IMG/VR virus record: IMGVR_UViG_3300046171_000231
Coordinates: 62,001-126,000 of that record
Reading direction: 5' to 3' (one strand)
DNA length: 64,000 nt
Made by a program: the position numbers and the translations under genes
Shown: positions 5 to 32,935 of the stretch, piece after piece
Layout: the number at the start of each line of letters is the position of its first letter
How positions within the stretch are numbered: position 1 is the stretch's first letter
Notes under the pieces: model-generated
The model's input: only the letters and a program-made list of their open reading frames with translations
The model's database searches: none
Told to the model about the DNA's origin: nothing

Positions 5-301
5 CTATACGATTACCCAAGTACCGTCAAGGGTCATCACTGTGTTAAGTGATACAGGTCCTGCATTCAATGCATTTACACCAGTAGTTATATAATAACC
101 ACCCGAACGACTTAAATTATTACTGAATAATAATGAACCATCACCAATATACAAACCGACTAATGAACTTGCAGCACCGACTAAAGTGGTGTTCAATTCT
201 AAATCGTTGGTTGCAATACCGACTGTTCCTTTATTATCTACAACAAGTCCATCTCCTGTGGAGTTAAGGTGTTGTACTTTGTTTACTTTTAATGTGCTCA
301 T
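5..301 (-). CDS. small virion fibre adaptor-like protein
   Basis: N-terminal MSTLKVNKV motif and C-terminal NALNAGPV...GTWVIV motif shared with 1613..2725 and 9129..10472. Confidence 0.55.
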   Translation of the reverse strand: MSTLKVNKVQHLNSTGDGLVVDNKGTVGIATNDLELNTTLVGAASSLVGLYIGDGSLLFSNNLSRSGGYYITTGVNALNAGPVSLNTVMTLDGTWVIV

Positions 302-303
302 GA

Positions 304-982
304 TTAACTTGTGCTGTATGCAGTAAAACTGTAACGACCAGTTGCAAAATTAACTCCTGCCCATCCATAAAATCTAATGGTAGTTAGATTATTTCCAGAT
401 AAGTCCAAAGCACACATTGCTTTTAAGTAACCTGTTTGAGTGCGTCTATGTGAATCTATCTGAACTATCCAGTAGTTAGTAGCAGAAGAAGACTCAAAAG
501 AAGCAAATACTTCTCCTGTGTCACTGGAGGCATTTAAATTATAATATCCAAATCGTATTTCATTCTGAGCAGTTTGATATCTTCCTGCAGTACTACCCCC
601 ATATGAAACTTCAGTAAAATTATATTTACCACCAGAGGTAATCATTCCAGCAGTTGTTCCTACCTGAAAAGAAGGAGTTCCACTGGCACTCATTGATATA
701 TTATGTCCAACAAAATCAACTTTATAACAATTAGCTGGTAATGTAAAGTCATAAGAACTACCACCACTAATATCAGCATTAACGGATCTTGTTACTATTA
801 AATTACCTTGCGTATTTGAAACTGAGGCAAAACTAAGTGCACCACTGCCATCCGTGACCATAGCTTGCCCAGAAGCTCCCGTCGGCACCAGGTAACTTGA
901 AAGTTTTACTTGCAGCTAAAGTATCAGGTGTTGTTAACTTGACCTTATTACCATTTGAATGTGTAAGATTTAGTTCGCTCAT
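304..982 (-). CDS. tail fibre/adhesin tip protein (one 1-nt insertion at ~879)
   Basis: ATG at 982 overlaps the upstream stop (ATGA). MSELNLTHSNGNKVKL...LPGADG joins ORF 304..888 if one C of ccc 878-880 is removed. C-terminal domain is paralogous to 20317..21063. Confidence 0.65.
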
Positions 983-1590
983 CCTTTAACCTCCATGGCT
1001 GTAATGTAACTTATATGACTGTTATCATTATCCCCATTTTCATTACCGTTTTGTTGACGATTTAAAGCTATAGAAGTGTTAGTAGCCATCGCAGTAATTT
1101 TATAAGTATGCGAACTTGTATCACCAGCCGTTTCCATATAAAAAACTGGAGTAGTTTGAGTATCCCAAGCACTTCTACCACAAGAAAGTCCAGATGTAGA
1201 CCTTGTAGCACTACCTACGGATTGACCAATAGCACCTGAAAGAACACTACCATCTTTATAAAGAAATACATGAACGTCACCTCCACTACCTTCTCCAATA
1301 CTAATAGTACCCATTATAAGTATTTTATTACTAGCACTAGATGCTTGTATAGCTACTTCTGGTCCACTAGTAAATTGATCGGCAAGTTTTTGTTCTTGAC
1401 TGTTTTCTATACCGCCTTGTACTTGAATTATTGAACCAGAGGGCAATGCAGAAGACGTTATCGCACCACTTGATAACTTTGCACTTGTTACTGCATTTGA
1501 TGCTAATGTATCTGCATCCACAGATCCATCTGGCAGTCCACCGACTGCTAATCCTGTTATACTTCCGTCTCCGTTAATAGTTACTGGCAT
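979..1590 (-). CDS. tail fibre-like structural protein
   Basis: MPVTINGDGSITGL...DTLASNAVTSAKL repeats, GSIIQV...ITAMEV C-terminal domain, late promoter upstream. Confidence 0.65.
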   Translation of the reverse strand: MPVTINGDGSITGLAVGGLPDGSVDADTLASNAVTSAKLSSGAITSSALPSGSIIQVQGGIENSQEQKLADQFTSGPEVAIQASSASNKILIMGTISIGEGSGGDVHVFLYKDGSVLSGAIGQSVGSATRSTSGLSCGRSAWDTQTTPVFYMETAGDTSSHTYKITAMATNTSIALNRQQNGNENGDNDNSHISYITAMEVKG

Positions 1591-1609
1591 AAGATTATTT
1601 CCTCATCAA

Positions 1610-1617
1610 TATTTATA
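1610..1617 (-). promoter_or_regulatory. T4-type late promoter TATAAATA
   Basis: Exact consensus about 20 nt upstream of ATG 1590. It contains the stop codon of 1613..2725. Confidence 0.75.
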
Positions 1618-2725
1618 CGATAGTCCAAGAACATCCTGATGGAACAGTGACTGCAATTCCAGCATTAATTGCAATTGGTCCTGCACTCATCGCATTCTTT
1701 GTTGAAGTAACTTGATAGTTGACTGCCACTGCCTTATCATTTTCAAAGAAGACCGTGTTTGTTGATGCACCACCAACAGGAGCACCAGCAGGTAGATTTG
1801 ATAAACTTGAACCATCACCACTGAAAGATGTTGCAGTTAATATTCCAGTTACGACAGCTCCCGTTTGTGTGGTTTCAAATTTCTTGGCATTATCCCAGTA
1901 CAATTCTACACCACTGTCAGGTAATACTTTTAATCCAACATCGGTATCTTTGGGCTTTATAATTATAGGTACTGCACCATTACTCTGTAAAATATTCTCA
2001 TAAGGTGTGCCATCGTGATAAATTTTAAAGTCTAAAAAATTACCACAATAAATTTTATTTTCATCAGCAGTATAAGAACTATCTGCCATCTTTATATTGT
2101 GCGTATTTGACTCTAAATCACCGCCTAGCTGTGGTGAAGTATCAGAGACTAAATCCGTATCAATACCAGTTAAATTAGCACCACTACCAGAAAAACTTGA
2201 TGCAGTTACAATACCTGCAAAATTTGCACCACCAGTAATACTAAGAGTTGCTCCGATACCTATGGCAGCTGAAGGATTACCAACCTCGAATCTACCATTA
2301 TGTGTTCGTGCTACTTTTGAACCTGCACTATACAATATGACACAATCTACTGTTGTTTCTAATCTCTCAGCACTATATGGTCCTCCTGTTATAAAGAAAG
2401 AACTAGTTGTTCCAACACCAATTTCTAAATCACCAGCAGAACTTTTTATTCTGGTAGGATGTGTATCTAAACATATTTCACCAGAGAATGTTGATACTCC
2501 AGCAACACTTAAATTATCTAAGTTTGTATGACCATCTACATCTATATCCCCATTGATATCTAATGGACTGGCGAATGTTGAAACACCAGCAATGTTCAGT
2601 GCATTTAATCCACTTATCTCTGTACAAGTTACAATTCCAGATACAATGATACCTGTGTCTGTGTACTCAACAGTACTCAGACCCGCACGGTTTGCAATTT
2701 TATTAACTCGTATCTCGGATGACAT
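1613..2725 (-). CDS. tail fibre protein
   Basis: DVDGHTNLDN and GIVTASSFSGSGANLT repeats, C-terminal NAMSAGPI...WTIV domain. Confidence 0.75.
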   Translation of the reverse strand: MSSEIRVNKIANRAGLSTVEYTDTGIIVSGIVTCTEISGLNALNIAGVSTFASPLDINGDIDVDGHTNLDNLSVAGVSTFSGEICLDTHPTRIKSSAGDLEIGVGTTSSFFITGGPYSAERLETTVDCVILYSAGSKVARTHNGRFEVGNPSAAIGIGATLSITGGANFAGIVTASSFSGSGANLTGIDTDLVSDTSPQLGGDLESNTHNIKMADSSYTADENKIYCGNFLDFKIYHDGTPYENILQSNGAVPIIIKPKDTDVGLKVLPDSGVELYWDNAKKFETTQTGAVVTGILTATSFSGDGSSLSNLPAGAPVGGASTNTVFFENDKAVAVNYQVTSTKNAMSAGPIAINAGIAVTVPSGCSWTIV

Positions 2726-2747
2726 TTATATCTTTTTGATTATTTAT
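2726..2747 (-). promoter_or_regulatory. late promoter/cassette junction ATAAATAATCAAAAAG
   Basis: Motif recurs upstream of 8 fibre genes. Confidence 0.7.
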
Positions 2748-2761
2748 TAATTAACTATAAG

Positions 2762-2923
2762 TTAATCTGCCTCTGCTGGTGTATTTCCAGCAGCGACCCA
2801 TTCAAGATATTCTTGATAGAATCTATTATCTGGATCTTTAGGTATTATCATACCTTTTTCAGCAAGGATGTAATTTGTTTCATTTCCATCCTCATCTTTC
2901 ATTTTTTTGTAAGAATAAGTCAT
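2762..2923 (-). CDS. 53-aa tail fibre assembly/chaperone-like protein (absent from the ORF track)
   Basis: MTYSYKKMKD...IPKDPDNRFYQEYLEWVAAGNTPAEAD. ATGA overlap with the fibre stop. The motif is typical of small proteins that follow phage fibres. Confidence 0.7.
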   Translation of the reverse strand: MTYSYKKMKDEDGNETNYILAEKGMIIPKDPDNRFYQEYLEWVAAGNTPAEAD

Positions 2924-4620
2924 AATTCTGCGTCTACTGTGTAAGCTAGGATACCAAAACCATTACCTGATCCAGATGTGCCATAGCTGTCTTCAATGTG
3001 TCTGAGGAAAAAACCTTTGGTTCTTACTTCTGTTGTATTGTTATTCCAGTCAACTTGTTGACTTCCAACTGCAACCTGTTCTATGTGAATATCACCTTGA
3101 TTAGTTGACCCATAAATTGTAAGAGTCGGAGACGCTCTCATTTCAACCTCAAATCTTTCAGTGAAATCATAGTAAGAGTTATGTTTACTAAAACTATGTA
3201 CACCGTCACCAGCGTACCAAGAAGATACTGCTAATGTATAATTAGTTCCACGGTTTGAATCTGTTGAACGTTGGTAATAGCGTTTGCATTTAAGTAAAGT
3301 TGTGCTTATGTCTTCATGTTTAAAGTCACTCGCTGTGCCAGTAGTGGTTGGTTCTAATTGTACTCCTGTTAACATCCATTCATTTGATGTTGAGTCTGTA
3401 AAATTAACTTGTCCAGTTGCACTTGAAGGATCTGTTGAACCTCTCCAAGCAGTATTTAAAGTTCCACCTTGTACTGCTGAACCAGCAACTAACCAGAATT
3501 GAATTTCTAAGGAACTACCATTATCAAATCCAAATTCACCAGTCGTATCAGCAGGAAAATCTATTGTATATCTGTTCCAATTAGTATTTGATACTGTATA
3601 AGAACCAGAGACATCTCTGTTATTATCACGATCATGTAATTCAACAATATATGTTCCACTTTTATTACATTTTACATAAAAAGATAAAGTGAATCTTTTA
3701 GCACCGCTTGTTCCTTTTGCAAACGGAGCTAAATTAAATCCCTCAATTTTATGAAACAATTTTACTTCTTCATTACTTGCGATTGAAGTATCTGCTGTTG
3801 TACAGTTTACTCTATAACTTTGATGAAAACCATCAGGTGAATCTCCTGAGTGTCTAATTCTAAATGCTGCTGAACTATTTTGATAATAAAAGTACCATCT
3901 GTCTAAATGATAACCAGAAGAAGTTACACTAGTAAAATCAGTAGCTCTTTGTGAGACAAGCATTTCACCATTTATTATCGCATTATATGAGGCTGCAGCA
4001 CTAATACCAGTTAAGTTTGCACCACTACCACTGAAACTTGTTGCTGTTACAATACCAGATGAATTAATACCTTTTCCAGTGGCCATTTTTATGTCGCCAG
4101 TGGTATTTACAGTTCCAGCATTACTAACTCCAAAAGTTCTAGTATCTGAGTTATTCGTTATTAATAATATATCTTCATCATCAATACCTCCACCTCTACC
4201 ACTTGCCCTCAATTTTAAAACAGCACCTTGAGTTGCAGCACCAGAGGTGTTAATAAATTCAACAATAGGAGAAGCACTATTTCCTGTGAGACTTAATTTT
4301 GTTCCATTATAAGTTAAATTTGCTTCACCATTTAAGTTAACACCACTACCACCAGTGATTACTCTGTTGTCGGCATTGTTTGCTATGGTTACTTGTGTTG
4401 GCAATGAAGTTAAGTTGGCACCACTTCCTACAAAACTTGTTGCAGTCACAACACCAGCGATGCTTACATTATCTGCATTTAAATGTCCGTCTACATCTAA
4501 ATCACCATTTAAATCTAATGTAGTGACTGTGGTAACTCCAGATACAATAAGACCCTTCTCAACGGTAGGTGATCCATCCGCTAATTGATTAGTTATTTTA
4601 TTGGCTCTTATTCTGGACAT
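2920..4620 (-). CDS. tail fibre with C-terminal carbohydrate-binding-like domain
   Basis: Fibre repeats, then NAIINGEMLVSQR...DRW...TGVQLE...CKRYY domain also present in 13587..15713. Confidence 0.75.
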   Translation of the reverse strand: MSRIRANKITNQLADGSPTVEKGLIVSGVTTVTTLDLNGDLDVDGHLNADNVSIAGVVTATSFVGSGANLTSLPTQVTIANNADNRVITGGSGVNLNGEANLTYNGTKLSLTGNSASPIVEFINTSGAATQGAVLKLRASGRGGGIDDEDILLITNNSDTRTFGVSNAGTVNTTGDIKMATGKGINSSGIVTATSFSGSGANLTGISAAASYNAIINGEMLVSQRATDFTSVTSSGYHLDRWYFYYQNSSAAFRIRHSGDSPDGFHQSYRVNCTTADTSIASNEEVKLFHKIEGFNLAPFAKGTSGAKRFTLSFYVKCNKSGTYIVELHDRDNNRDVSGSYTVSNTNWNRYTIDFPADTTGEFGFDNGSSLEIQFWLVAGSAVQGGTLNTAWRGSTDPSSATGQVNFTDSTSNEWMLTGVQLEPTTTGTASDFKHEDISTTLLKCKRYYQRSTDSNRGTNYTLAVSSWYAGDGVHSFSKHNSYYDFTERFEVEMRASPTLTIYGSTNQGDIHIEQVAVGSQQVDWNNNTTEVRTKGFFLRHIEDSYGTSGSGNGFGILAYTVDAEL

Positions 4621-4644
4621 ATTGCTTTTTGATTATTTATGATG
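4606..4644. repeat. 39-nt exact direct repeat, copy 1 (late promoter plus gene start)
   Basis: tcttattctggacatattgctttttgattatttatgatg is identical at 6742..6780. Confidence 0.9.
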
Positions 4645-5053
4645 GTTCAGTTGGCCAAGTAACTGATGAATCATCAAGATAACCTTGTTCATTTAAACTT
4701 GGATTTGCACTTGATGGAAGATCTCTAAGTGCTTGACGATATGTTTCATATGATGTTTTAATTCCAACAGGAACATCACCTAATTGAGACCAATCAGTTT
4801 CAGTAAGTTTAATATTTCTTACCACTCTTAATTCATTCATCGGAAATTTTGTTTGCAAGTCATCATACTTTGCCTTGAAAGTTGCCCAGTCTTTAGATGG
4901 TGTACTAAGAATTGATTCATTAGTATCTGTTGTAATTCCAACAACCTCTTGACATTTTGATAAGTAAGTAGATTCATCTACAATACCTTCATCAAATCTA
5001 AATTGTGTGATGCCAATACCTATAAGTGTTTGTTGTATTATGTGTTCGTACAT
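4637..5053 (-). CDS. phage tail assembly chaperone
   Basis: LRVVRNIKLTETDWSQLGDVP...YRQALRDLP...WPTEPS motif. Probable start MYEHII at 5053. Confidence 0.75.
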   Translation of the reverse strand: MYEHIIQQTLIGIGITQFRFDEGIVDESTYLSKCQEVVGITTDTNESILSTPSKDWATFKAKYDDLQTKFPMNELRVVRNIKLTETDWSQLGDVPVGIKTSYETYRQALRDLPSSANPSLNEQGYLDDSSVTWPTEPS

Positions 5054-5055
5054 GA

Positions 5056-6756
5056 TTAACCTTTCTCGTATTCCCAAACTTGGAGTATGTTTTGACTATG
5101 ATGATACCATTGTAAACCCACACTTGTAAAGTCCACTAGACCTTGAGTTTTCAAACTAATTGAAGTTCCAGCACATTCAAAACTACCCATCAGGTGAACT
5201 GTACGATGATGTCTCGATAGTCCACTACCTCCAGTATAGCTTCGACCATCCATATTACCCATAATACGCTCGTTTGCAATCACAGTAGTCCAACTTCCAC
5301 CACCTTCTTGTTTTTGAATTCTCCACATCGCATCACCATTGCTATTAGCATCAGAACCCTGCCAACATTGTGATTGATGGTGTATCACAATCAGATTACC
5401 TGCTTTTTTAGGAGTATAACTTGACAGTATTGTCCTTAGATCAGTATAGGAATTAGAAGTAATGCTTACACCAGTAAAGGTAGCATACGTAGAATAATTT
5501 ACAAGTGGATAGAAATGGTTTCCACTTGTATATAGTTTACCATCAGATCCGATGCGAAATCTTTCTGTTGTTGTTCCACTTGAAGGTGAAGTATAAAATG
5601 CAAGATCTCCAATTGAATCAGTGGATGTACGATGATGTAATATTGCTGCACCCACATGAGTATCATCTGAAGTATTCGCAAATGCAATACCAATTTTTGA
5701 AGTGTTGCTATTTGTTTGTGATCTAATTACAAGATGATAATTATTTTTATCTGATACATCACTTTCTGCTGTGAGATCCTTATCAAGCAATAATAAACCA
5801 GTGCTAGTTTCTACAGTTCCGATGGAAATTTTTCCATCTGGATTAATACGCATCTTTGGCACTTTGCCATTCAAGTTATCGGTATTACCACCACTAGTTC
5901 CTCCAACATCCGTAAGGAAATCTATTTTATTTTGACCATTACCTGCATCAGTACCAATAACTAGTCTATCACCGCCAGCTTCATATCCAAATAAAGCAAG
6001 ACCACTTCCGTGACTATGTGCTATGAATAATGCATCACCATTATTACTACCACCATCAGCAGCAACTCCAATATAATTAGAAATTGAATCAAGGAAGTTT
6101 AAAGGAAAACTATTATCTCCAGCTTCTATATTACCGCCCTTAATATGTAAATCACCAGCAGTATCAAGTCGCATTTTTTCGGCACTAACAGCATTAGTAC
6201 CACCACCAATATGGAAAGATAAATCTTTATTAAGTCCTGTTCCAATAGAAGTTAAGTTTGATTTGTGTTGTATATTAAAATCAGCATTGACATTATTTGT
6301 CGTATTTAAAGCTACTCTATAAGCTGAAGAATTATCTTCTACACCTATTTCAACAGTTCTTTCAGTACCAACAATATCAACATCATAAACTGAGGAGGTA
6401 GTACCTTTTAATATTGTACCATTTGCAGTAATTTGCCCACTAAAAGTATGAATTCCAGTATGAATCGCACCAGATGCTTGTGCCTGAATCTTTACGTTAC
6501 CACCAGAATCCTTGATTGCAGTTGCATCAATACCAGTTAAGTTTGCACCACTTCCTACAAAACTTGTCGCAGTAACAACACCTGTTACATTAATATTCGT
6601 AGCTTGATGTTGAATAGAAGTTGTAATACCAGTAAGATTTAAATTATTAATACTTCCTGTGACTGTAGTAACTCCAGCTATAACTAATCCATGAGAAACG
6701 GTAGGTGCTCCGTTTGCCATTCTGTTTGTTATAAGATTAGTTCTTATTCTGGACAT
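5056..6756 (-). CDS. tail fibre protein
   Basis: MSRIRTNLITN N-terminus, EKMRL/ERFRI beta-repeats, distinct C-terminal tip. Confidence 0.75.
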   Translation of the reverse strand: MSRIRTNLITNRMANGAPTVSHGLVIAGVTTVTGSINNLNLTGITTSIQHQATNINVTGVVTATSFVGSGANLTGIDATAIKDSGGNVKIQAQASGAIHTGIHTFSGQITANGTILKGTTSSVYDVDIVGTERTVEIGVEDNSSAYRVALNTTNNVNADFNIQHKSNLTSIGTGLNKDLSFHIGGGTNAVSAEKMRLDTAGDLHIKGGNIEAGDNSFPLNFLDSISNYIGVAADGGSNNGDALFIAHSHGSGLALFGYEAGGDRLVIGTDAGNGQNKIDFLTDVGGTSGGNTDNLNGKVPKMRINPDGKISIGTVETSTGLLLLDKDLTAESDVSDKNNYHLVIRSQTNSNTSKIGIAFANTSDDTHVGAAILHHRTSTDSIGDLAFYTSPSSGTTTERFRIGSDGKLYTSGNHFYPLVNYSTYATFTGVSITSNSYTDLRTILSSYTPKKAGNLIVIHHQSQCWQGSDANSNGDAMWRIQKQEGGGSWTTVIANERIMGNMDGRSYTGGSGLSRHHRTVHLMGSFECAGTSISLKTQGLVDFTSVGLQWYHHSQNILQVWEYEKG

Positions 6757-6780
6757 ATTGCTTTTTGATTATTTATGATG
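6742..6780. repeat. 39-nt exact direct repeat, copy 2
   Basis: Identical to 4606..4644. Confidence 0.9.
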
Positions 6781-9117
6781 TTATACTCCGAACCGACCAC
6801 GATCAAGTTCAAAGTGATTCTTGATTTCTGTTGCTGATAATGCACGATTATATATTCTTACAACAGCGATCTTACCATCCCATCTTTCATAGTCATCTCC
6901 TCTTGATGCAATAGCAAATCCAGCCGTACTAACTACTGCTAGAGAACTTCCAGCACTTGCAGAGTTAGCAAATGCACCATTGATATACCACCTATTCACA
7001 TTATTACCACTGTCATACTGCCATACATGATGATGCCAAGTTTTATCAGGGAAATTTTGTCCAGTAATATTACCACTACCAGCACCAACTCCACTATTAT
7101 TATAATGGAACTGACCATCTGGATCAGCAATCATATTAAATTGATTTGGAAATCCACTTCCATATCTTGATACTATCACCTCTCTACCAGCACCGTCATA
7201 CCAAATCCAAGATTCAATTGTCATAGATGGGGTATTTAATACTTCTGCTATATTTGGAGATCCACCTGCTCCTCCTGCAATCTGTACTCTACCTTCGTTT
7301 GACACACAATCTAAGTACCCACCACGTCCTACTCTATAGTTAAATGAACCACCGTTTACAGTCATTGGTGTATTACTACTACTACTTGTCCAATCTGTTG
7401 TTGAATGTGCCAAAGCAGCAGATAAATTAGCTGAGTTTGCTATACCACCATTATCACTATATCCAGTTAATCTTCCAAAGTCACAGTCAAATATTAATCC
7501 ACTTCCACTTCCTTGAGAATATTGATTGATCACTCCCTTAATATTGAATGTTCCTGCTCCTTGAGAATGAGAGGAATCTGTAGTGTTGGTTATAGTACCA
7601 TATTCATTAATTCGCATCGCTTCATATGCGACTGCACCATGTTTTCTTACATCAAATCCTAAACATCCATCATAATCACCATCACCAGTATTTGCTTTAA
7701 ATCCTCTAATACCAGCAAAGATTGCTTGGGATGTTTTTCCTGATGTATGATGTCCTTGGAATACTATTCCACCAGTGGGAGTTGCATTATAATCAGCATT
7801 ATCTTTTAAAAATATTTGACCTTTTGCTGTCCCTTCACCCAAATCAGCAGCATATATTTGTAGAGCACTAGTTGCACTGGTAGTATTAATACCAATTCTA
7901 CCGTTTGAAATGATGCGAAGTCTTTCATATAAACCAGCATAAAATATTTGATCTACACCTGAACCTCCATAATGAACCATATCCTCAGAGGCATCCAACT
8001 GAATATATGCCAATTGACTACCAGCATTATAAAATCTTACACCAGCACCACCAGAAGCACTTTTATCTAAAACAAATTGAGCATTATTATTTGCATTTCC
8101 CTTATTTACCCAAATATACTCATCAGATTGAATGCGAAGTTTCTCATTCCCCTCTGTCGTAAATTTTATATGACCATCAGAACCTGTATCAATAGTTTCG
8201 ACTTCTGTATTTCCTTCAAATATTTTATCAGCAACAATTCCAGTTAATTGTGATCCATCACCACGATATGATGTTGCTGTTATAATTCCAGCATTACCTA
8301 AATGAATATTACTTCCTACACTTACAAAATCATCTACGTCTACACCTGAACGTGCTGTTATGATTCCGATAGAATCTATATTTGTTACATCTTCATATGT
8401 TATTGTGCCACCGATTGATAGTCCACCTGTGATAGTGGTCATTCCAGATATTACAACACCATTCTGAATTGTTGTTGCACCATTTGCTGCTGCGTTTGAT
8501 ATTGAATTAACTCTGATTCTACCTGCACTTGCACCACCACCAAAGGTTCCAAAGTCTGCAAGTCCTAAAACGTCAGGTATTAAATCATCTCCTTCAGCAA
8601 CGATTAAATCAGCACTACCATCAACTTTGATATCTGCATACTGTGTATATGCTTTTGATGCGGATGCAGGAACATCAACAGTCACAGAAGATGGTACACC
8701 AAGAACCTGATTGGTGTAATACATCTTGTTAAGTGGACTTGATGCAGTCGCACTTAATGCAGTTCCTAATCCAGCAGGTAGATTTGTTAAGTCTGATCCA
8801 TCTCCTACAAAACTTGTTGCTGTTATAACACCTGCGTTTCCTAATTTTATATTACTACCTACATCTACAAAATCATCTACATCAGCATATGCTACATTAA
8901 GACCAGCTGAGTGTAAATCAGATGTGCCTGTTTTGAAATTAGATGCTGAAGATATACCAGTTGTATTAACGTGGTTATGAATATGAATATTACCTGCGTG
9001 ATCTAATTTTAAAGCTTCACTTGTATCGTTTATATGCAGCGTAAATTGATTATCAATCCCCGTTGGAGTGGTGATACTCGTGATACCTGATATACTTTTT
9101 TGACTAATCTGTGACAT
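6781..9117 (-). CDS. tail fibre with C-terminal LamG/ConA-like lectin domain
   Basis: TYEDVTNIDS repeats, C-terminal TIESWI...WHHHVWQYD...WYING...GKIAVVRIYNRALSATEI. Confidence 0.8.
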   Translation of the reverse strand: MSQISQKSISGITSITTPTGIDNQFTLHINDTSEALKLDHAGNIHIHNHVNTTGISSASNFKTGTSDLHSAGLNVAYADVDDFVDVGSNIKLGNAGVITATSFVGDGSDLTNLPAGLGTALSATASSPLNKMYYTNQVLGVPSSVTVDVPASASKAYTQYADIKVDGSADLIVAEGDDLIPDVLGLADFGTFGGGASAGRIRVNSISNAAANGATTIQNGVVISGMTTITGGLSIGGTITYEDVTNIDSIGIITARSGVDVDDFVSVGSNIHLGNAGIITATSYRGDGSQLTGIVADKIFEGNTEVETIDTGSDGHIKFTTEGNEKLRIQSDEYIWVNKGNANNNAQFVLDKSASGGAGVRFYNAGSQLAYIQLDASEDMVHYGGSGVDQIFYAGLYERLRIISNGRIGINTTSATSALQIYAADLGEGTAKGQIFLKDNADYNATPTGGIVFQGHHTSGKTSQAIFAGIRGFKANTGDGDYDGCLGFDVRKHGAVAYEAMRINEYGTITNTTDSSHSQGAGTFNIKGVINQYSQGSGSGLIFDCDFGRLTGYSDNGGIANSANLSAALAHSTTDWTSSSSNTPMTVNGGSFNYRVGRGGYLDCVSNEGRVQIAGGAGGSPNIAEVLNTPSMTIESWIWYDGAGREVIVSRYGSGFPNQFNMIADPDGQFHYNNSGVGAGSGNITGQNFPDKTWHHHVWQYDSGNNVNRWYINGAFANSASAGSSLAVVSTAGFAIASRGDDYERWDGKIAVVRIYNRALSATEIKNHFELDRGRFGV

Positions 9118-9122
9118 ATTTT

Positions 9123-9129
9123 TATTTAT
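9123..9129 (-). promoter_or_regulatory. late promoter ATAAATA
   Basis: Immediately upstream of ATG 9117. Confidence 0.6.
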
Positions 9130-10472
9130 TAGACGACAACATAATTACCGTCAATGAAGAGATTACCATTTATAGTAACTGGACCTGCCATCAGACCATT
9201 AAATGCAGTTCCAATATAATGATTATCATTTAAAGTATTATCGTGAATTATCATTCCATTACTTATATACATTCCTTTTGCCATACCATTACTTACAGCA
9301 AAACTATTTCCCTGTCCTGTATGATGATGACACCAGTAATAAAGTAATGCAGGTGCATCAGCAGGTATCGTCCATACAACTTGACGGACTGTAGCAGCAT
9401 TAAATCCACTTACATACTGTGCCATTGTTTTATTGACACCATCTAATTTATATGTAACACCTGTAATATAATGACCGTGACTATTGTGATCACCGCCAGG
9501 TCCGAGACTGAACATCAATGGATGATTTGCACCACCATATACTTCATTACTATTATCAGACTGGTCAAAGGTATAGGTATGACGTTTATTAATTTCAAAC
9601 AATGCAGGTTTCTCAACTCCATCTAAGTAAAATACTCCTGTTGATTGACCTCCAACTGTATCTGTTCCGACTGTGACAGTGATTGTTGTGTCGATAGATG
9701 ATGCACCGATACCTTGCAAATCATTATCATCAAGACTACTCGTATGAACACCAATTGATTTATTGGTTGCGATACCAGCAGTGTATGTACTCCAAGTTCC
9801 ACCAGCACCAGCTCCACCACCACCTGCAATACTAATATCTACTGTGGTTCCATTGACTGCAAATGTATTACCAGTTCCTACAAAATTAAGTTGAGTAATA
9901 CCAGCACCAATCTGAGTTCCTGCAGATTGAATACCAACTTCAGAAGCACCACTGAATAATGTTGCTGTTGCAACTCCAGCAATACTTACATTATCAAGAT
10001 TAGTATGTCCATCTACATCTAATTCTACAAAGTCACCATCACCTTTAAATGTTGTGGCAGTGATAACACCTGCATTTCCTAATTTTATATTACTTCCTAC
10101 ATCTAAAAAGTCATCTACATCTACACCTGACCTTGCTGTGATGATACCAAGTGAATCAACATTCTTTACATCTTCATATGTTAAGACTCCACCAACAGTA
10201 ACATTACCTGAAAAGTTTGCAGTAGATCCAGATATTGCCCCAGTAAAAGACGAAACACCAGCAACGGTCATTCCTGCATTTATATCAACAGCGTATGTGT
10301 TGAATGTTGCAGCAGTTCCAGTAATTATATTATCTGTGGACGCTATACCAGTAAGCCCAGCACCATCACCTACAAAGGATACTGCAGTAATAATACCTGT
10401 AGATTTTATATTATGACTGTTTATATTGGATGCGGTATGAATACCTGGACCAAGTATCCGTGTAAATGCCAT
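9129..10472 (-). CDS. tail fibre with cupredoxin-like insert and C-terminal adaptor motif
   Basis: Fibre repeats, HPLMF...YYWCHHHTGQG, NGLMAGPVTI...GNYVVV. Confidence 0.7.
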   Translation of the reverse strand: MAFTRILGPGIHTASNINSHNIKSTGIITAVSFVGDGAGLTGIASTDNIITGTAATFNTYAVDINAGMTVAGVSSFTGAISGSTANFSGNVTVGGVLTYEDVKNVDSLGIITARSGVDVDDFLDVGSNIKLGNAGVITATTFKGDGDFVELDVDGHTNLDNVSIAGVATATLFSGASEVGIQSAGTQIGAGITQLNFVGTGNTFAVNGTTVDISIAGGGGAGAGGTWSTYTAGIATNKSIGVHTSSLDDNDLQGIGASSIDTTITVTVGTDTVGGQSTGVFYLDGVEKPALFEINKRHTYTFDQSDNSNEVYGGANHPLMFSLGPGGDHNSHGHYITGVTYKLDGVNKTMAQYVSGFNAATVRQVVWTIPADAPALLYYWCHHHTGQGNSFAVSNGMAKGMYISNGMIIHDNTLNDNHYIGTAFNGLMAGPVTINGNLFIDGNYVVV

Positions 10473-10493
10473 TATTGCTTTTTAGTTATTTAT
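10473..10493 (-). promoter_or_regulatory. late promoter/cassette junction ATAAATAACTAAAAAG
   Basis: Near-identical to 4621..4640. It contains the upstream stop codon. Confidence 0.7.
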
Positions 10494-10846
10494 GATGGTT
10501 TAGGGTATTTTGCTTTTACAGGATCGACTATATCGGTCTTCCACTTGTCTATACCGTGGTGATAGATATAGTCAAGTTGCTCAGCTAATGGAGGATAGAT
10601 ACCTTCTGTAGTAGCAACACCGTCTACCATCTGACCTGTTCTTTGTTCTTTATAAAGTTCTTGATTTTTAATTCTTGTTACTTCTGCTAATACCTGTTCT
10701 TTTGTTGGAATTTTACTTTCGTCAGATAAGTTACCATCACCAATTAACCATTTAACATTTTCATATTCATCATCCCCCTCCACATAAAAGAAAAGTCCAC
10801 CACAAAGGTTTTCACATGCTTGTAAAAAAGTGCTTGTTCCGTTCAT
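10490..10846 (-). CDS. tail fibre chaperone-like protein
   Basis: YPPLAEQLDYIYH...VKAKYPKPS motif, also in 13224..13583. ATGA overlap at 10843-10846. Confidence 0.65.
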   Translation of the reverse strand: MNGTSTFLQACENLCGGLFFYVEGDDEYENVKWLIGDGNLSDESKIPTKEQVLAEVTRIKNQELYKEQRTGQMVDGVATTEGIYPPLAEQLDYIYHHGIDKWKTDIVDPVKAKYPKPS

Positions 10847-11364
10847 AAATTCATCTCCCAAATTGATAAACTTGATCCACCCATACTGTTTTCAATTCTT
10901 TGATCATCACTAGCATTAGGATTTAATATATTAAAAGGTCTGTCACTATTTCCGTTTGCAGTTCTATGACCTACTAATACATTTGTACTTCCAGTTCCTG
11001 TTGCATTTGTTACACTGCCAGATATTACCATCATCTTATAATAACTAACATCAGTATATTGATAATGAACAATTGGATAACCACTTCCTACACCACCACT
11101 TGTAACGAGGCTACCATTATATGTTCCTCCCACTTTAAGATTCATAGTAATCGCACCAGCATTATTACCCCAACAAGCAATAAATCCTTGAAATACTAGT
11201 GTGGAAGAAGATAATTTTTTATCAAAACTACCAAAATCACAAGTAACAATTTCATTATTACTAGCGGAATTGGTGAGACTCCTTCGAGTAGTATTTTTTA
11301 ATCTTGTATAGTGAACTACATGAGCAGCTCTATGTTGTCCTTCATCACTAAAATAAAGACTCAT
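10843..11364 (-). CDS. fibre tip/adhesin-like protein
   Basis: Beta-rich 173 aa ending SSLSIWEM. Translationally coupled to the upstream fibre (TAATG). Confidence 0.55.
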   Translation of the reverse strand: MSLYFSDEGQHRAAHVVHYTRLKNTTRRSLTNSASNNEIVTCDFGSFDKKLSSSTLVFQGFIACWGNNAGAITMNLKVGGTYNGSLVTSGGVGSGYPIVHYQYTDVSYYKMMVISGSVTNATGTGSTNVLVGHRTANGNSDRPFNILNPNASDDQRIENSMGGSSLSIWEMNL

Positions 11365-13205
11365 TATAAAACCTCCTCCATCTTGATTTTGAATTTTTTA
11401 CCACTTCGATTATTTATCATATACACATCACTTTCACCCTCTTGTATTGTCCAGTCACCCCAAGTATTATCTATACTATTTGTTGAACCTTCATTAGATA
11501 AGTTAAGGTCATTTGTGTATATGTTTCTCCAACGCATTGAAGAAGTACCTAAGTCATAAGTATTATTAGCTACTGGTGCCCAATGCCCATCACTTTGTAA
11601 TTGACATCTAACTGTATTATTAGTGGCAGAATTTTAATTGACTAGCAACTGTATTATTAATGTAAGCATTACTTCCGTCATAATACATTTGTAACTGGTT
11701 TGCTGAACCAGACATAAATCTGGCAGTGTTATCACCAAAGTTAATATTATTCCCTGCTGTTAATAGCTCCATGTTACTTGCACTCCATAACTTAGTGTTT
11801 CAAGCTTTTTACTTCCATTGAAATATAACTCAACGGCCCCGTCACCTATTAATTTTATCCCGTTGTCCGAACCTTGTGGTCGTATGTAAATATCATTTCC
11901 AGAATTGATATACATATCAACACCAGAACCGTTATCTATAACTAGATTTCCAGTATCGTTTTCTAGGTATGAATTAGATCCGTTATGAAATATTCTTAAA
12001 TCTCCACCAGATTTATTACCAATAGTAACACCATTTGAATTACCATCTGGAAAAGAAGCTTTACCTGTTGATATAAGATTACCTTGAACTTCTAATTGAC
12101 CATTGCTTTTAAGTTTTAACTTATCTACATAACTTCCAGAAATATTACTTTTGAATGTTAAATCATTCTCATCTTGTTCAGATTGTATTTTCCAACCATC
12201 TCCATTATCATCACCTTGGTCGGCAATTAAATTTAATGACGCAGGAGTTGCTTCACCAGCTCTAACAAATAAATTTGAACCATTCCATTGTAGTTCCGAC
12301 TCACCTTGCAATTCGTTAGCTGTTCCAGTTCCAGTAATAATATAATTATTTGTATTGCTGTTTATTGTTGTACTTGTTACTGCTGCAAAGGTTGAGTCAC
12401 CTCTCAAGAATGTAGATGAACTTGCAGTTCCAGATCCTAATCTTGCGGTGGGAACTGTTCCTGATGCTAAATCAGATGCATCAAGGTTTGTTAGATTAGC
12501 ACCACTGATTGCAGGTAAAGCACCTGAAAGTTTTGACGCAGTTAATGTAGATATTCTAGCATCAGCAACTGTACCAGTTAGTTGACCAGCAGGTAAACTC
12601 GTTAGGTTTGCTCCTGAACCAGTAAAAGAAGTTGCGGTAACAACACCTGCATTTCCCAATTTAATATTACTACCAACCTCTGCACCTGAACTAAAAGTAT
12701 GAATACCAGTGTACATTGCACCCGATGCCTGTGCTTGTATCTTTACATTACCACCAGAATCTTTAATGGCAGTTGCATCAATACCAGTTAAGGCAGCACC
12801 ACTACCTACAAAACTTGTTGCTGTTATGACACCAGCATTACCTAATTTTATATTACTTCCTACATCTAAAAAGTCATCAACATCGAGTGCTGGTGCAGTG
12901 ATTATACCAACTGAATCTATATTAGTTACATCTTCATATGTTAATGTACCAGCGATTGAAACATTACCTGAAAAAGTTCCATCAACTGCAGTAACATTTC
13001 CTGAAAAAGATCCACCAGTTGCAGTTATAATACCTGTAGATTTGATATTATGAGCTTCAATTAGATTAGAATGGATTGTTGTTACACCAATATTAAATGA
13101 TGTAGCAGTGGTAGTGATACCAGTAAAATCGGCATTATTACCCACCCAGTTGGTGTCTGTCGCAACACCAGGTCCAGTTATCTTTGTGAGTCTACTTAAT
13201 ACCAT
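11364..13205 (-). CDS. tail fibre protein (three 1-nt insertions between ~11630 and ~11775)
   Basis: After correction ORF 11760..13205 continues into NTYDLGTSSMRWRNIYTNDLNLSNEG...WGDWTIQEGE...INNRSGKKFKIKMEEVL*, a common marine-phage fibre C-terminal domain. Confidence 0.75.
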
Positions 13206-13227
13206 TTATATTTTTTTAGTTATTTAT
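13206..13227 (-). promoter_or_regulatory. late promoter/cassette junction
   Basis: ATAAATAACTAAAAAAA containing the stop codon of 13224..13583. Confidence 0.7.
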
Positions 13228-13583
13228 TGAGGAATGAATGTGTTTATACCAACCACCCAACTAGGAACTACTGTAGTAACAACTCCTACTTGTGATTTTG
13301 GATATTTTGCCTTGATTTCTGCAATCTTATCTTTCCAAGTTGTTGTTCCATTCACTGCATCCCAATACTGCATATCCTGTTGTTCTTCTAAACTTGGATA
13401 CTCTGCAGCACGAGCATCAGAGTAATCAACTGTTGTAACCGTATCAATACCCACCACACAAGTTGTACCGATTCCTACAACATCTGCTTTGAATAGTTGA
13501 TAATCTAAATTACCTTCAGATACTGGTATGAATGCACCATCAGAAAGTCTTTTAATTGTTGTGTCGTCTAAAAATTTATACAT
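13224..13583 (-). CDS. tail fibre chaperone-like protein
   Basis: IKRLSDGAFIP...NLDYQ and RAAEYPSLEEQQDMQYWD...IKAKYPK motifs. Confidence 0.65.
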   Translation of the reverse strand: MYKFLDDTTIKRLSDGAFIPVSEGNLDYQLFKADVVGIGTTCVVGIDTVTTVDYSDARAAEYPSLEEQQDMQYWDAVNGTTTWKDKIAEIKAKYPKSQVGVVTTVVPSWVVGINTFIPQ

Positions 13584-13586
13584 TTT

Positions 13587-15713
13587 TTAAATCTCCGCAG
13601 TTGCTGTGTGTCTCCATTCATAAAATCTTTCAGTTCCACTCATGTAAGCGTTATAGCCTTGTCTACTTGCAGCAGATGCACTAAGCGATCCGGCTCCCTG
13701 AAAATTGGAAAAAGATATAGTTGGTGTATCTCTCATTTCTGTTATAAATCTTACAGGAAATTGTCTACCAGATACATTACCACTATTCCAAGACGCTCTA
13801 GTACTTATATCTTTTTGGAAATAACGTTGGCAACGTGCGAGTTCATCACCATAACTAACGTGTTCATATGGCGTGGCAGATCCTACTTCAAACTGAACGC
13901 CAGTTAGGTTCATGTAGTTATTTGTACTACTCATAAAATTGGGTTGATTGGTTGAGCAGTATTGAACAGAAGATGTGGTGTGCCAAGAATTTAAAGTAGA
14001 TGTACGCCTGTCTGATTGTATTGCTAACGCCCATTGAACTCTAAGACCACCAGCGTTCCAAGTACCAGAAGTATCGCCAGGAACAGTAATTGTTTTCTTT
14101 TCCCAAGTATTAGCAGCACTTATAGTATATTCAGCAACAAAACATCTAGTACCTTGCGTATCGTTAAATAGAGAAGCACTATAAGTTCCTGTTAAGTTAG
14201 ATTTTATCCAAAAAGATAAAGTACAACTTTTTGCATAACTCTCGCCATAATTTAAGTGTTGTATATTTTTATCTTCAATTACATGACTAACAAATGTCAA
14301 TCCATCTATTGATGAGTCTGCTGTTACACATTTTATTCTTAAAGAATATTTATAACCTTCTGGGTAGTTTTGCTGCCATTCCAGTCCAAGAATACCACCA
14401 TTACCATTATAACCTTTAAAACGATCTGTATGATAAGTATGAGTAGAACCACTAAGGTTGTTCATAGATGCTAGAGCAAATCTTTGGCAAACTTGCATAG
14501 CTCCGTTGATTATTAAATTTCTATGTGATAATTGTCCCACTGTTGGAACAAATTCAGTAGCAGTAGCAATACCAGTCACATTCATATTACCACCTGCGTC
14601 GATGCGAACTCTTTCAGTTCCACCGTTTGTTCCATTTGTAGAGAATTTGATATAATTATCACCATGATTATATGCTACTGAACCTGCTTCAGCAGTACTA
14701 TCTTTAAACATTATAACTGATGTTGCAAAATCATTACTTGTTTCTAGTATTAATTCAGAATCAGAATTAGCATTTGCTTCGGCAGCGTGAACTGTTAGTT
14801 GTGCGTCACCAGTTGCTCCACCATTAAAAGTTAAGTTTGCTTCACCAGTAATAGCAGAAGCACTAGTCGTTGTTACAACTCTATTATCTGCACCATTTGT
14901 TAATGTTGGTCCTGCACCTGTTAACCCACTACCATCTCCAACAAAACTTGTTGCAGTTATAATACCAGTTGCATTTATATTTCCTACAGGAGATATTGTA
15001 ACTGCTGCTCCTACAGTAACATTTCCTTCTGCTGATACACGAAGTTTTTCAGTTGAACCATCTTTGTTTAAGAATCTAGTTAATGTGCTTTCAATATCTA
15101 ATGAACCAGAATCGTTTGTATTTCTTAATCTTGATTTAGCACCTGATGATGTATGAATTAATATCATATCAGATGCATCACCAAATACTAAATTTTGATC
15201 ATCGAGAAAATTTTGACCGTGACTTAAATTTCCAAATAAAGTTGATTTTGCAACAGCTTCTAAAGTATTTGCGGTATTAGAACCCATAATAACTTTATTT
15301 GCTGCATTATTGTTTATTGTTGTTCCCGAAATTGTTGACCAAGACGCTGCACTTCCTGAACCACCACTTGTTAATACTTGTCCTGATGTTCCATAGTTTG
15401 CACCACCGATTCCTAACTGTCCACCATTTCCTACTCTAAATTTTTCACTACCACTTATCTGTAGAAGTAAATGAGATGTTGAGTTTACATTACCAGTAAC
15501 ATTTCCAATTAAAGTTGTTGCAGTTATAATACCAGCGTTACCAAGTTGTATTGTACTTCCTACGTCTATATGATTTGCAGTGTGTTTTGTTGTTACATCA
15601 AATTGTGTAGCGGTCATCACACCTACTACATTAAATCCTGATATTGAATCTAATACACCATCAGATGCTAATATCTTATCGTTATTATTCTGTCCACTGA
15701 TGGTTATTGCCAT
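13587..15713 (-). CDS. tail fibre with C-terminal carbohydrate-binding-like domain
   Basis: GANYGTSGQVLTSGGSG repeat, RNLIINGAMQVCQR...TGVQFEVG...ELARCQRYF. Confidence 0.75.
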   Translation of the reverse strand: MAITISGQNNNDKILASDGVLDSISGFNVVGVMTATQFDVTTKHTANHIDVGSTIQLGNAGIITATTLIGNVTGNVNSTSHLLLQISGSEKFRVGNGGQLGIGGANYGTSGQVLTSGGSGSAASWSTISGTTINNNAANKVIMGSNTANTLEAVAKSTLFGNLSHGQNFLDDQNLVFGDASDMILIHTSSGAKSRLRNTNDSGSLDIESTLTRFLNKDGSTEKLRVSAEGNVTVGAAVTISPVGNINATGIITATSFVGDGSGLTGAGPTLTNGADNRVVTTTSASAITGEANLTFNGGATGDAQLTVHAAEANANSDSELILETSNDFATSVIMFKDSTAEAGSVAYNHGDNYIKFSTNGTNGGTERVRIDAGGNMNVTGIATATEFVPTVGQLSHRNLIINGAMQVCQRFALASMNNLSGSTHTYHTDRFKGYNGNGGILGLEWQQNYPEGYKYSLRIKCVTADSSIDGLTFVSHVIEDKNIQHLNYGESYAKSCTLSFWIKSNLTGTYSASLFNDTQGTRCFVAEYTISAANTWEKKTITVPGDTSGTWNAGGLRVQWALAIQSDRRTSTLNSWHTTSSVQYCSTNQPNFMSSTNNYMNLTGVQFEVGSATPYEHVSYGDELARCQRYFQKDISTRASWNSGNVSGRQFPVRFITEMRDTPTISFSNFQGAGSLSASAASRQGYNAYMSGTERFYEWRHTATAEI

Positions 15714-30582: not shown

Positions 30583-31660
30583 TTAGAGTGCATTACCACG
30601 AGGTAATACTTCCTCTGGGAACACGAAGTTCTCGTGTGGTTGGTCTACAGATGACATCCAAGCTCTCATACCTTCATTTAAAAGAATATTCTTTGTATAG
30701 AAAGTTTCAAACTCTGGGTCTTCTGCTGCTCTTATCTCTTGAGATACAAAATCGTATGCTCTTAAGTTAAGTGCAAGACCTACAATACCGATTGATGATG
30801 TCCACATACCCATCACAGGTACGAACAACATAAGGAAGTGTAAGAATCTTTTGTTTGAGAAAGCAACACCAAATATCTGTGACCAGAATCTGTTTGCTGT
30901 AATCATACTGATAAGTTTCTTCTTCCTGTGTAGGGTCAAATGCTCTGAATGTAGAACTCTGAACCTTACCATCAGTATAGACTGAAGTGTCTTCATACAA
31001 AGTGTTCTGTACTGTTGCACCGTGAATGGCACAGAGTAATGCTCCACCTAATATACCTGCTACACCCATCATATGAAATGGATTTAGAGTTATGTTGTGG
31101 AAACCTTGTATGAATAAGATATAACGAAAGATTGCTGCGACACCAAATGAAGGTGCGAAGAACCAACTATGCTGCCCTAGTGGGTAGATTAAAAAGATGC
31201 TAGTGAAGACTGCTATAACTGCTGAGAATGCGAGTGCGTTGTAAGGACGAATCCCAACAAGACCTGCAATTTCAAACTGTCTTAACATAAACCCTATGAG
31301 TCCGAACACACCGTGAAGTGCAACGAAGTTCCAGAGTCCACCGAGTTGTAACCAACGAACGAATGAACCTTGTGCCTCTGGTCCCCAAAGGAACATAAGA
31401 CTATGACCCATTGCATCACCAGGTGTTGACACTGCTGCTGTTAAGAAGTTTGCTCCTTCAAGATATGAAGATGCAATACCGTGTGTATACCAACTAGTAA
31501 CGAAAGTAGTTCCAACGAACCAACCTCCGATAGAAAGGTAAGCACAAGGTAAAAGTATAAGACCAGACCATCCGATAAACACGAAACGATCTCTCTTTAA
31601 CCAGTCATCAAGAACATCAAACCAACCCCTTGTAGGTGCTTGTAAAGTAGATGCTACCAT
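30583..31660 (-). CDS. psbD: photosystem II D2 protein (1-nt insertion at ~30910)
   Basis: [23 protein letters not shown]...EEETY|[14 protein letters not shown]...EVLPRGNAL. Confidence 0.97.
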
Positions 31661-31674
31661 TAATTTTTCCTATG

Positions 31675-31698
31675 AAAAAGGGGTCTTGCGACCCCTTG
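31675..31698 (-). terminator. intrinsic terminator/stem-loop between psbA and psbD
   Basis: AAGGGGTC-GCAA-GACCCCTTTTT. Confidence 0.8.
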
Positions 31699-31718
31699 AG
31701 TTGTTTTGGGTTAAGTAA

Positions 31719-32808: not shown

Positions 32809-32823
32809 TAGTAAGACGTTTGT

Positions 32824-32930: not shown

Positions 32931-32935
32931 GTAGT

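What the first reader, a model, noticed from the sequence alone, without database searches (positions are those of the whole stretch)
5..10472. Recurrent N-terminal 'plug' and C-terminal 'socket' motifs suggest a branched fibre assembly
Seen: an N-terminal S.(I/L)(R/K).N.(I/V) motif begins 5..301, 1613..2725, 2920..4620 and 5056..6756, and occurs internally in 6781..9117 (GRIRVNSISN). A ~45-aa C-terminal domain N(A/G)(L/M).AGP(V/I)...G.(W/Y).(I/V)V ends 5..301, 1613..2725 and 9129..10472. The 98-aa protein is little more than the two motifs. Established: branched receptor-binding complexes exist in phages such as CBA120 and G7C. Inference: the fibres dock onto one another through these modules, so one virion could display many tips.
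Basis: partly seen in the sequence, partly recalled or inferred. Interest (0 to 1): 0.6.

Follow-up and report, generated by a model that had tools for sequence, protein, structure and literature searches.

The report
Plug-and-socket joints in cyanophage fibres

Summary
Both motifs are real and far beyond chance. The window is the fibre gene cluster of a 236-kb T4-like cyanomyovirus. The "AGP" domain is an uncharacterised module (no Pfam family, no PDB sequence match) with 2458 cluster representatives. It always sits at the extreme C-terminus and has three subtypes, all present here.

The new result is gene adjacency. The gene 2-40 nt downstream of an AGP gene starts with a short conserved N-terminal peptide, and its class matches the AGP subtype (30/32 after AGP genes, 20/240 after other genes). 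In the window the pairs are 9129-10472 -> 6781-9117, 1613-2725 -> 979-1590, and 5-301 -> three head genes.

The 979-1590 product has a TNF/C1q-like head. Its P-SSP7 homologues acquire host-range mutations (PMC5520035).

- On small heads in other phages it follows AGP genes directly (48 arrays).
- On long fibres it pairs with a different upstream module, PLNK...DLIPD. The two are fused in one protein in 34/35 loci, as in 6781-9117, or split into adjacent genes in 5/6.

Docking is therefore supported by comparative genomics only. The single complex prediction gave no verdict.

The parts
9129..10472 (-). 447-aa fibre protein ending in the AGP domain, subtype J (about residues 386-447, window 9132-9317)
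   Evidence: HMM E 2.8e-24. Alignments A4/A6. The next gene starts 11 nt downstream with the cognate class-I peptide.
6781..9117 (-). 778-aa fibre. Class-I N-terminal peptide (res 1-17, 9067-9117); PLNK...DLIPD module (res 128-186, 8560-8736); Gly-rich linker; internal plug module (res 199-233, 8419-8523); C-terminal ConA-like/Laminin_G_3 domain (res 625-766, 6820-7245)
   Evidence: It is the only PLNK...DLIPD module in the genome.
5056..6756 (-). 566-aa fibre with the MSRIR-type plug module (res 1-35, 6652-6756)
   Evidence: The upstream gene ends in a lectin-like domain, not AGP.
4637..5077 (-). Tail-fibre assembly chaperone (146 aa)
   Evidence: Pfam PF16778 Phage_tail_APC, E 8e-13; phrog_4912.
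2920..4620 (-). 566-aa fibre with the MSRIR-type plug module (res 1-35, 4516-4620)
   Evidence: phrog_4492 tail fibre, E 4.5e-42.
1613..2725 (-). 370-aa shaft protein: plug-type N-terminus (res 3-10, 2696-2719), a middle part like P-SCSP1u fibre gp28, and AGP subtype D (res 323-370, 1616-1759)
979..1590 (-). 203-aa head protein: class-C N-terminal peptide (res 1-14, 1549-1590), a flexible linker and a TNF/C1q-like jelly-roll head (res 50-203, 982-1443). It starts 22 nt after the AGP-D gene.
   Evidence: AF2 pLDDT 84.6, above 90 in the head. Foldseek matches to the Pgp3 TNF-like domain, the BC2L-C and PLTL lectins, C1q, and the A-1(L) short-fibre CBD.
304..982 (-). Second gene after the AGP-D gene (about 225 aa, N-terminus MSELNL...). 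In this assembly it is frameshifted by one extra base near position 876.
5..301 (-). 98-aa adaptor: plug peptide (res 2-9, 275-298) plus the AGP subtype A module (res 25-98, 8-229). It is followed, just outside the window, by three head genes (genome 61482-61997, 60992-61459, 60471-60992).

Best explanation
Window 5-10472 is part of the receptor-binding fibre cluster of a T4-like cyanomyovirus. The cluster is built from exchangeable modules joined without covalent bonds.

Shown:
- The AGP domain is a widespread module that is always C-terminal. In P-SSP7 gp17 it lies at the end away from the tail.
- The next gene nearly always starts with a 10-17-residue conserved peptide whose class goes with the AGP subtype.
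- The proteins carrying that peptide are either further fibres or small TNF-like heads.
- The same heads occur with different N-peptides.

Inferred:
- The N-peptide is an address label that inserts into the trimeric AGP tip, probably as an added beta-strand on a flexible Gly-rich tether.
- That would mount the downstream product on the distal end of the upstream one.

In this phage the proposed joints are:
- 9129-10472 carries 6781-9117.
- 1613-2725 carries the 979-1590 head, and perhaps the next two products.
- The 98-aa protein is an adaptor whose AGP-A tip carries the three heads encoded after it.

The S.IR.N.I motif is one class of such labels. On long fibres its partner is the PLNK...DLIPD module. 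In 6781-9117 the two are tethered in one chain. In other phages they are two adjacent genes. Where the free MSRIR-type fibres of this phage (2920-4620, 5056-6756) attach is unknown.
For: 1. AGP family. It has 2458 representatives (E<=1e-3) among 1.84e9 proteins. In the best 150 it is always at the last residue. It comes in three highly conserved subtypes, attached to at least 10 different N-terminal classes.

2. Adjacency after AGP genes, in 43 distinct viral pairs:
- AGP-J is followed by the class-I peptide in 16/16.
- AGP-D is followed by the class-C peptide in 11-12/18, and by other classes in the rest.
- AGP-A is followed by MGTLN in 6/8.
- Gaps are 2-40 nt.

3. Reciprocal check: class-I genes have AGP-J directly upstream in 17/19, plus one divergent AGP.

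4. Control: a labelled N-terminus follows 30/32 AGP genes but only 20/240 other genes (Fisher p 2.5e-24, related loci not independent). Classes I, C, G and Q occur only after AGP genes.

5. Conservation island: pairwise identity is 0.6-0.9 in the last 50 aa upstream and 0.58/0.44 in the first 20 aa downstream, against about 0.1 in both gene bodies. There are many synonymous differences (1032 synonymous against 686 amino-acid changes), so selection acts on the proteins.

6. Plug-bearing head arrays start right after an AGP gene in 48 distinct cases.

7. P-SSP7 gp17 ends in AGP-D and is followed by four head genes. Its N-terminal 117 aa bind the tail (bioRxiv 10.64898/2026.08.19.745834). Host-range (resistance-breaking) mutations map to genes 37 and 38 of that cassette (PMC5520035).

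8. Head fold: TNF/C1q-like, like trimeric lectins.

9. Heads 63-91% identical to 979-1590 carry either the class-C peptide or a plug-type peptide.

10. PLNK...DLIPD and the plug are fused in 34/35 loci and split into adjacent genes in 5/6, plus L083 and L084.
Against: - There is no physical or structural evidence. The complex prediction gave no verdict, and the monomer model of the 98-aa protein is unusable (pLDDT 52).
- Adjacency plus matching subtypes could arise from linkage of a cassette that recombines at its conserved edges.
- The loci are related and were retrieved with the motifs themselves, so there is ascertainment bias.
- Stoichiometry and geometry (coaxial or branched) are unknown.
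- No fused AGP-plus-peptide protein was seen.
Confidence: 0.6

Rival explanations
1. The AGP domain is only a C-terminal folding and trimerisation nucleus, like the foldon or an intramolecular chaperone. Under this reading the N-peptides anchor their proteins elsewhere on the baseplate or tail. The adjacency would then reflect inheritance of a cassette and recombination at conserved junctions.
For: The domain is strictly C-terminal and far more conserved than the fibre bodies, as is typical of C-terminal folding modules of fibres (established knowledge: T4 fibritin foldon, endosialidase C-terminal chaperone domain). A conserved TAATAAATA lies right after the stop codon, so the junction also holds DNA-level signals. 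The free MSRIR fibres here have no socket gene upstream.
Against: It does not explain why the N-peptide class of the next gene tracks the AGP subtype across at least six unrelated upstream bodies. It does not explain why heads tethered only by an 11-residue peptide and a Gly linker always start right after an AGP gene. There is no Peptidase_S74 or other Pfam match.
Confidence: 0.2
2. The AGP domain is itself the receptor-binding tip, and the downstream small proteins are separate adhesins or accessory factors mounted elsewhere.
For: [quoted passage not shown] Distal C-termini of fibres commonly bind receptors (established knowledge: T7 gp17, T4 gp37).
Against: It is about 70-90% identical across proteins that are under 50% identical overall, and across phages of different hosts. 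That is the opposite of what host-range tips show. The host-range mutations in P-SSP7 fall in the downstream heads (PMC5520035).
Confidence: 0.08
3. One reading: in this phage the AGP trimers of 5-301, 1613-2725 and 9129-10472 bind the S.IR.N.I N-termini of the four named fibres, giving a CBA120/G7C-like branched complex.
For: The motif does start head genes that directly follow AGP genes in other phages. 5-301 is the third gene after the AGP-D gene 1613-2725.
Against: MSRIR-type fibres were preceded by AGP in 0/8 related loci and pair instead with PLNK...DLIPD. Each AGP gene here is followed by a gene of another peptide class. No gp10-like domains were found.
Confidence: 0.1

Closest known systems
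P-SSP7 tail fibre gene 36 (gp17) and the paralogous cassette of genes 37-39 (Schwartz and Lindell 2017, PMC5520035)
   Same: Homologous arrangement: a fibre ending in AGP-D, then head genes after a 3-nt gap, with class-C, MSQLKL, MATLN and MSRII N-termini and the ...MEVAA ending. The heads acquire host-range mutations.
   Different: The paper infers a role in fibre structure from gene position only. The AGP domain, the N-peptide classes and a docking mechanism are not described. Distal fibre parts are unresolved in the P-SSP7 and P-SCSP1u maps.
T4 long tail fibre joints (gp34-gp35-gp36-gp37) and the T2/S16 gp37-gp38 tip adhesin
   Same: Consecutive genes whose products join end to end, the distal one carrying receptor specificity. 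The joint regions are conserved while the bodies are mosaic (established knowledge).
   Different: No sequence relation was detected. The partners here are short peptides on Gly tethers and TNF-like heads.
Lactococcal phage TP901-1/Tuc2009 BppU-BppL tripods, and the tripod complexes of Staphylococcus phage 812
   Same: A trimeric C-terminal domain holds separately encoded receptor-binding trimers by their N-termini. This gives a precedent for one-to-three branching (established knowledge; PMC13433997 abstract).
   Different: Homology was not tested and not detected. Branching here is only suggested, by three genes following a socket gene.
CBA120 / G7C branched tailspike complexes
   Same: Several receptor-binding proteins on one virion, assembled through conserved N-terminal modules.
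   Different: Those use T4 gp10-like domains. None was detected in these proteins by Pfam or PHROGs.
Anabaena myophage A-1(L) neck fibre gp82-gp81-gp80 bead chain (PMC10966104)
   Same: [quoted passage not shown] This is a model for what a 98-aa plug-plus-socket protein could do.
   Different: That is a neck fibre, not a tail fibre, and no sequence similarity was tested beyond the PDB searches.

Membership tests
Branched tailspike complexes of the CBA120/G7C type | T4 gp10-like attachment domains in the N-terminal parts of the receptor-binding proteins | tested here: not met
   Pfam scan of ten fibre proteins at E<=0.1 gave no gp10-like family. PHROGs gave only generic fibre or wedge hits. This was tested by sequence only; the folds could not be tested.
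Branched tailspike complexes of the CBA120/G7C type | One protein binds two or more different receptor-binding trimers at once | not testable with these tools
   There is only gene-order evidence: three genes follow many AGP genes.
T4-type long tail fibre (gp34-37) joints | Sequence homology to gp34, gp35, gp36 or gp37 | tested here: not met
   No such Pfam, PHROG or PDB match.
T4-type long tail fibre (gp34-37) joints | Consecutive genes whose products join C-terminus to N-terminus | tested here: inconclusive
   Adjacency, subtype matching and the fused/split forms fit. Binding itself is not shown (one search gave no verdict).
TNF/C1q-like trimeric head domains (lectin-like receptor binders) | Jelly-roll beta-sandwich fold of about 130-150 aa | tested here: met
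   AF2 model of 979-1590, with pLDDT above 90 over residues 50-203. Foldseek E 2e-6 to 1e-3, probability 1.0, to Pgp3, BC2L-C, PLTL and C1q.
TNF/C1q-like trimeric head domains (lectin-like receptor binders) | Trimeric assembly and sugar or receptor binding | not testable with these tools
   Only indirect support: host-range mutations in the P-SSP7 homologues (PMC5520035).
Phage_tail_APC fibre assembly chaperones (PF16778) | Match above Pfam's gathering score | tested here: met
   4637-5077: 48.4 bits against a cut-off of 26.6.
C-terminal intramolecular chaperone domains (Peptidase_S74) | Pfam match or conserved Ser-Lys dyad in the C-terminal module | tested here: not met
   None of 30 AGP domains matched it.

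The most novel reading that the evidence does not exclude
The cluster may encode a hierarchical tree in which each trimeric socket carries the three different products encoded after it. In gene order, 6781-9117 is followed by three plug fibres (5056-6756, 2920-4620, 1613-2725). The AGP-D gene 1613-2725 is followed by 979-1590, 304-982 and 5-301. The AGP-A of 5-301 is followed by three heads. One fibre would then display five or more different receptor-binding tips. Alternatively, the three heads could form C1q-like heterotrimers. Exactly three heads follow an AGP gene in 29 of 54 complete arrays, and P-SSP7 has a noted three-paralogue cassette (PMC5520035).
Probability: 0.15. Interest if true: 0.85.

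Novelty: new variant of a known kind. Interest (0 to 1): 0.6.

Why it matters
Host recognition by marine cyanophages is poorly understood. The distal fibre parts are invisible in the published P-SSP7 and P-SCSP1u structures.

A simple, readable code (socket subtype plus N-terminal address peptide) would tell from sequence alone which gene products are mounted on which fibre. It would explain how heads are swapped between T7-like podoviruses and T4-like myoviruses. It would also give a mechanism for the host-range cassette downstream of the fibre gene.

The idea can be tested directly with a cultured model phage. It would improve the annotation of thousands of metagenomic "hypothetical" fibre proteins.

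Tried and rejected
- Complex prediction: AGP-J C-terminus x3 with the N-terminal 50 aa of 6781-9117 x3 gave no answer (score 0.02). It is not evidence either way.
- AF2 monomer of the 98-aa protein with 18 sequences: pLDDT 52, so it was not used for fold search.
- Pfam on 30 AGP domains: nothing.
- PDB profile search on the AGP domain: only chance-level hits.
- ESM Atlas feature search: no usable hit.
- By eye, residues 128-186 of 6781-9117 looked like a degenerate AGP domain. This was rejected: the AGP HMM does not hit it, and hhalign of PLNK...DLIPD against each AGP subtype gives probability below 1%.
- Searching relatives with the five-sequence N-terminal alignment failed because it has no conserved stretch. 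A three-sequence alignment was used instead.
- Megablast of the region against cultured phages gave only 60-bp matches.
- The Liu et al. 2010 P-SSP7 paper could not be read, so virion proteomics for the heads were not checked.
- No reads tools were used, and no sequence was taken for human.
Full report
**Context.** The window is bases 62001-126000 of a 235.8-kb IMG/VR virus record. It carries psbA, sugar-nucleotide genes and baseplate-like genes, and its few DNA matches are to Prochlorococcus phages. It is therefore a T4-like cyanomyovirus. Positions 5-15713 are one run of minus-strand fibre genes that continues below the window start to about genome 52300.

**Observation.**
- Residue shuffles expect 0.25 N motifs, against 5 seen.
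- They expect 0.0035 N motifs at an N-terminus, against 4 seen.
- They expect 0.001 C motifs, against 3 seen.
- The N module is about 35 aa.
- The C module is 48 aa in 1613-2725 and about 65-74 aa in 5-301 and 9129-10472.

**The AGP domain.**
- A profile of the three copies finds 2458 cluster representatives at E<=1e-3 among 1.84 billion proteins.
- In the best 150 the domain ends at the last residue, apart from two with short trailing extensions. It falls into three subtypes, each present once in this genome.
- It is joined to at least ten different N-terminal classes. Only 16-23 of the 150 have a plug-like N-terminus.
- It has no Pfam family and no solved relative by sequence.
- PHROGs see it only as the C-terminal end of several fibre or unknown-function families.

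**Adjacency after AGP genes.** In 45 viral loci fetched with the AGP profile, the gene that starts 2-40 nt downstream has an N-terminal peptide that goes with the AGP subtype:

| AGP subtype | Downstream N-terminus | Count |
|---|---|---|
| J | M..I..(N/K)SI.GI.SIT (class I) | 16/16 |
| D | M.(V/I)TING.G.ITG (class C) | 11-12/18, other classes in the rest |
| A | MGTLN | 6/8 |

- The upstream proteins belong to at least six unrelated N-terminal families and range from 137 to 1125 aa. The downstream proteins range from 121 to 998 aa.
- Reciprocally, 17 of 19 class-I genes have AGP-J directly upstream, and one more has a divergent AGP-like end.
- As a control within the same loci, 30 of 32 AGP genes are followed by a labelled N-terminus, against 20 of 240 other genes. 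Classes I, C, G and Q are never seen after a non-AGP gene. The loci are related, so the p-value is only indicative.
- Conservation forms an island. Identity is 0.6-0.9 in the last 50 aa upstream and 0.58/0.44 in the first 20 aa downstream, against about 0.1 on both sides. There are many synonymous differences, so the proteins themselves are under selection.

**Pairs in the window.**
- 9129-10472 (J) is followed by 6781-9117 after an 11-nt gap.
- 1613-2725 (D) is followed by 979-1590 after a 22-nt gap.
- 5-301 (A) is followed by the head at genome 61482-61997 after a 7-nt gap.

**What the downstream proteins are.**
- The 979-1590 product models well (pLDDT 84.6). It has a flexible first 50 residues and a jelly-roll head. 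The head matches the TNF-like domain of Pgp3, the trimeric TNF-like lectins BC2L-C and PLTL, C1q, and the A-1(L) short-fibre CBD.
- Its database relatives (63-91% identical heads) carry either the class-C peptide or a plug-type peptide such as MSILRVNTI or MSTLKVNAI.
- So the N-peptide is exchangeable on one and the same head, as expected of an address label.

- Contigs carrying plug-type heads show an AGP-D-like gene, then after 3-4 nt a head starting MS(T/I/Q)LKVN.I, then further plug-type heads interleaved with small chaperones.
- Among 80 loci fetched with such heads, 48 distinct arrays begin right after an AGP gene. Most of the remaining 24 begin after a chaperone, an unrecognised head or an AGP variant that my pattern missed.
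- Exactly three heads follow the AGP gene in 29 of 54 complete arrays. This set was selected with head sequences, so it is biased.
- The cultured model phage P-SSP7 has the same layout. gp17 (715 aa) ends in AGP-D and is followed after 3 nt by genes 37, 38, 39, a chaperone and gene 41, all with head-type ends.
- The N-terminal 117 aa of gp17 bind the adaptor and nozzle, and the distal part is unresolved (bioRxiv 10.64898/2026.08.19.745834). The same holds for P-SCSP1u (PMC10575957).
- Resistance-breaking P-SSP7 mutants carry mutations in genes 37 and 38. The authors call these, together with gene 39, a cassette of three paralogues with a presumed but undemonstrated role in fibre structure (PMC5520035).

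**The MSRIR-type plug of the long fibres.**
- It is not preceded by AGP in any of 8 related loci.
- Searching with residues 1-207 of 6781-9117 showed that a PLNK...DLIPD module is followed, in many proteins, by a Gly-rich linker and a plug-like motif.
- Some proteins end right after that module. In two such contigs the next gene starts MSRIRAN.
- In 46 viral loci fetched with that module, it is followed in the same chain by the plug in 34 of 35 distinct cases. When the gene ends there, the next gene starts with the plug in 5 of 6.
- This is a fused-versus-split (Rosetta-stone) relation, and 6781-9117 is the fused form. A close relative (P0110, 73% identical) keeps the internal plug.
- The genome has only this one PLNK...DLIPD module. 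The docking site of the free MSRIR fibres 2920-4620 and 5056-6756 therefore remains unknown.

**Mechanism.**
- Shown: module families, positions, adjacency, subtype matching, fused/split forms, head fold, and host-range genetics in a homologous cassette.
- Inferred: the N-peptide binds the preceding C-terminal module. This would mount fibres and heads serially, and possibly three per socket, on a distal tip. The 98-aa protein would act as an adaptor between two such joints.
- Not shown: any physical contact. The complex job gave no verdict, and the monomer model of the 98-aa protein is poor.

**Comparison with known systems.** It works like the T4 gp36-gp37 or gp37-gp38 joints, the lactococcal BppU-BppL tripods, and the A-1(L) head-to-tail neck fibre. 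The modules themselves appear to be undescribed.

Noticed in passing
window 304-982 (minus strand), near position 876: The gene after 979-1590 starts at an ATG at 982 (MSELNL...) but is out of frame with its main part. Compared with the near-identical contig IMGVR_UViG_3300046171_000178, this assembly has one extra base, so the gene is frameshifted here. This could be a real mutation or an assembly error.
   Followed up: partly
window 11364-13205 (minus strand): The 481-aa fibre gene 11760-13205 is followed by two short ORFs in other frames (11620-11772 and 11364-11537). The 57-aa ORF equals the WGDW...NNRSGKK C-terminal module that ends many intact class-I fibres in the database. The fibre gene therefore looks broken into three pieces.
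   Followed up: no
window about 9315-9347, in 9129-10472: Just before the AGP-J module there is a YYWCHHHTGQG stretch that resembles a cupredoxin copper-site loop, within a roughly 160-aa domain that matches phrog_708. No Pfam or PDB sequence match supports this.
   Followed up: partly
window 30767-32943: psbA is read as two ORFs (30767-31660 and 32029-32808) with about 370 nt between them. Rfam finds no group I intron at gathering score, but it does find a PhotoRC-II RNA at 32844-32943 upstream of psbA.
   Followed up: partly
loci L012-L030, the bases right after the AGP-J stop codon; window 9118-9131: The stop codon of AGP-J genes is usually part of a conserved TAATAAATA. This resembles the T4-type late promoter TATAAATA (my own knowledge), so the downstream gene may have its own late promoter.
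   Followed up: no
window 10490-10861 and 13224-13583: These two small proteins (phrog_9114) end in ...KAKYPKP(S), like the small chaperone-like genes interleaved between head genes in other phages and like P-SSP7 gene 40.
   Followed up: partly
window 5-10472 plus genome 60471-61997: Three labelled genes follow each putative socket gene. After 6781-9117 come 5056-6756, 2920-4620 and 1613-2725. After 1613-2725 come 979-1590, 304-982 and 5-301. After 5-301 come three heads. The same count of three is common in other phages.
   Followed up: partly
window 35504-43854: A run of glycosyltransferase and nucleotide-sugar epimerase genes lies downstream of the fibre and psbA region.
   Followed up: no
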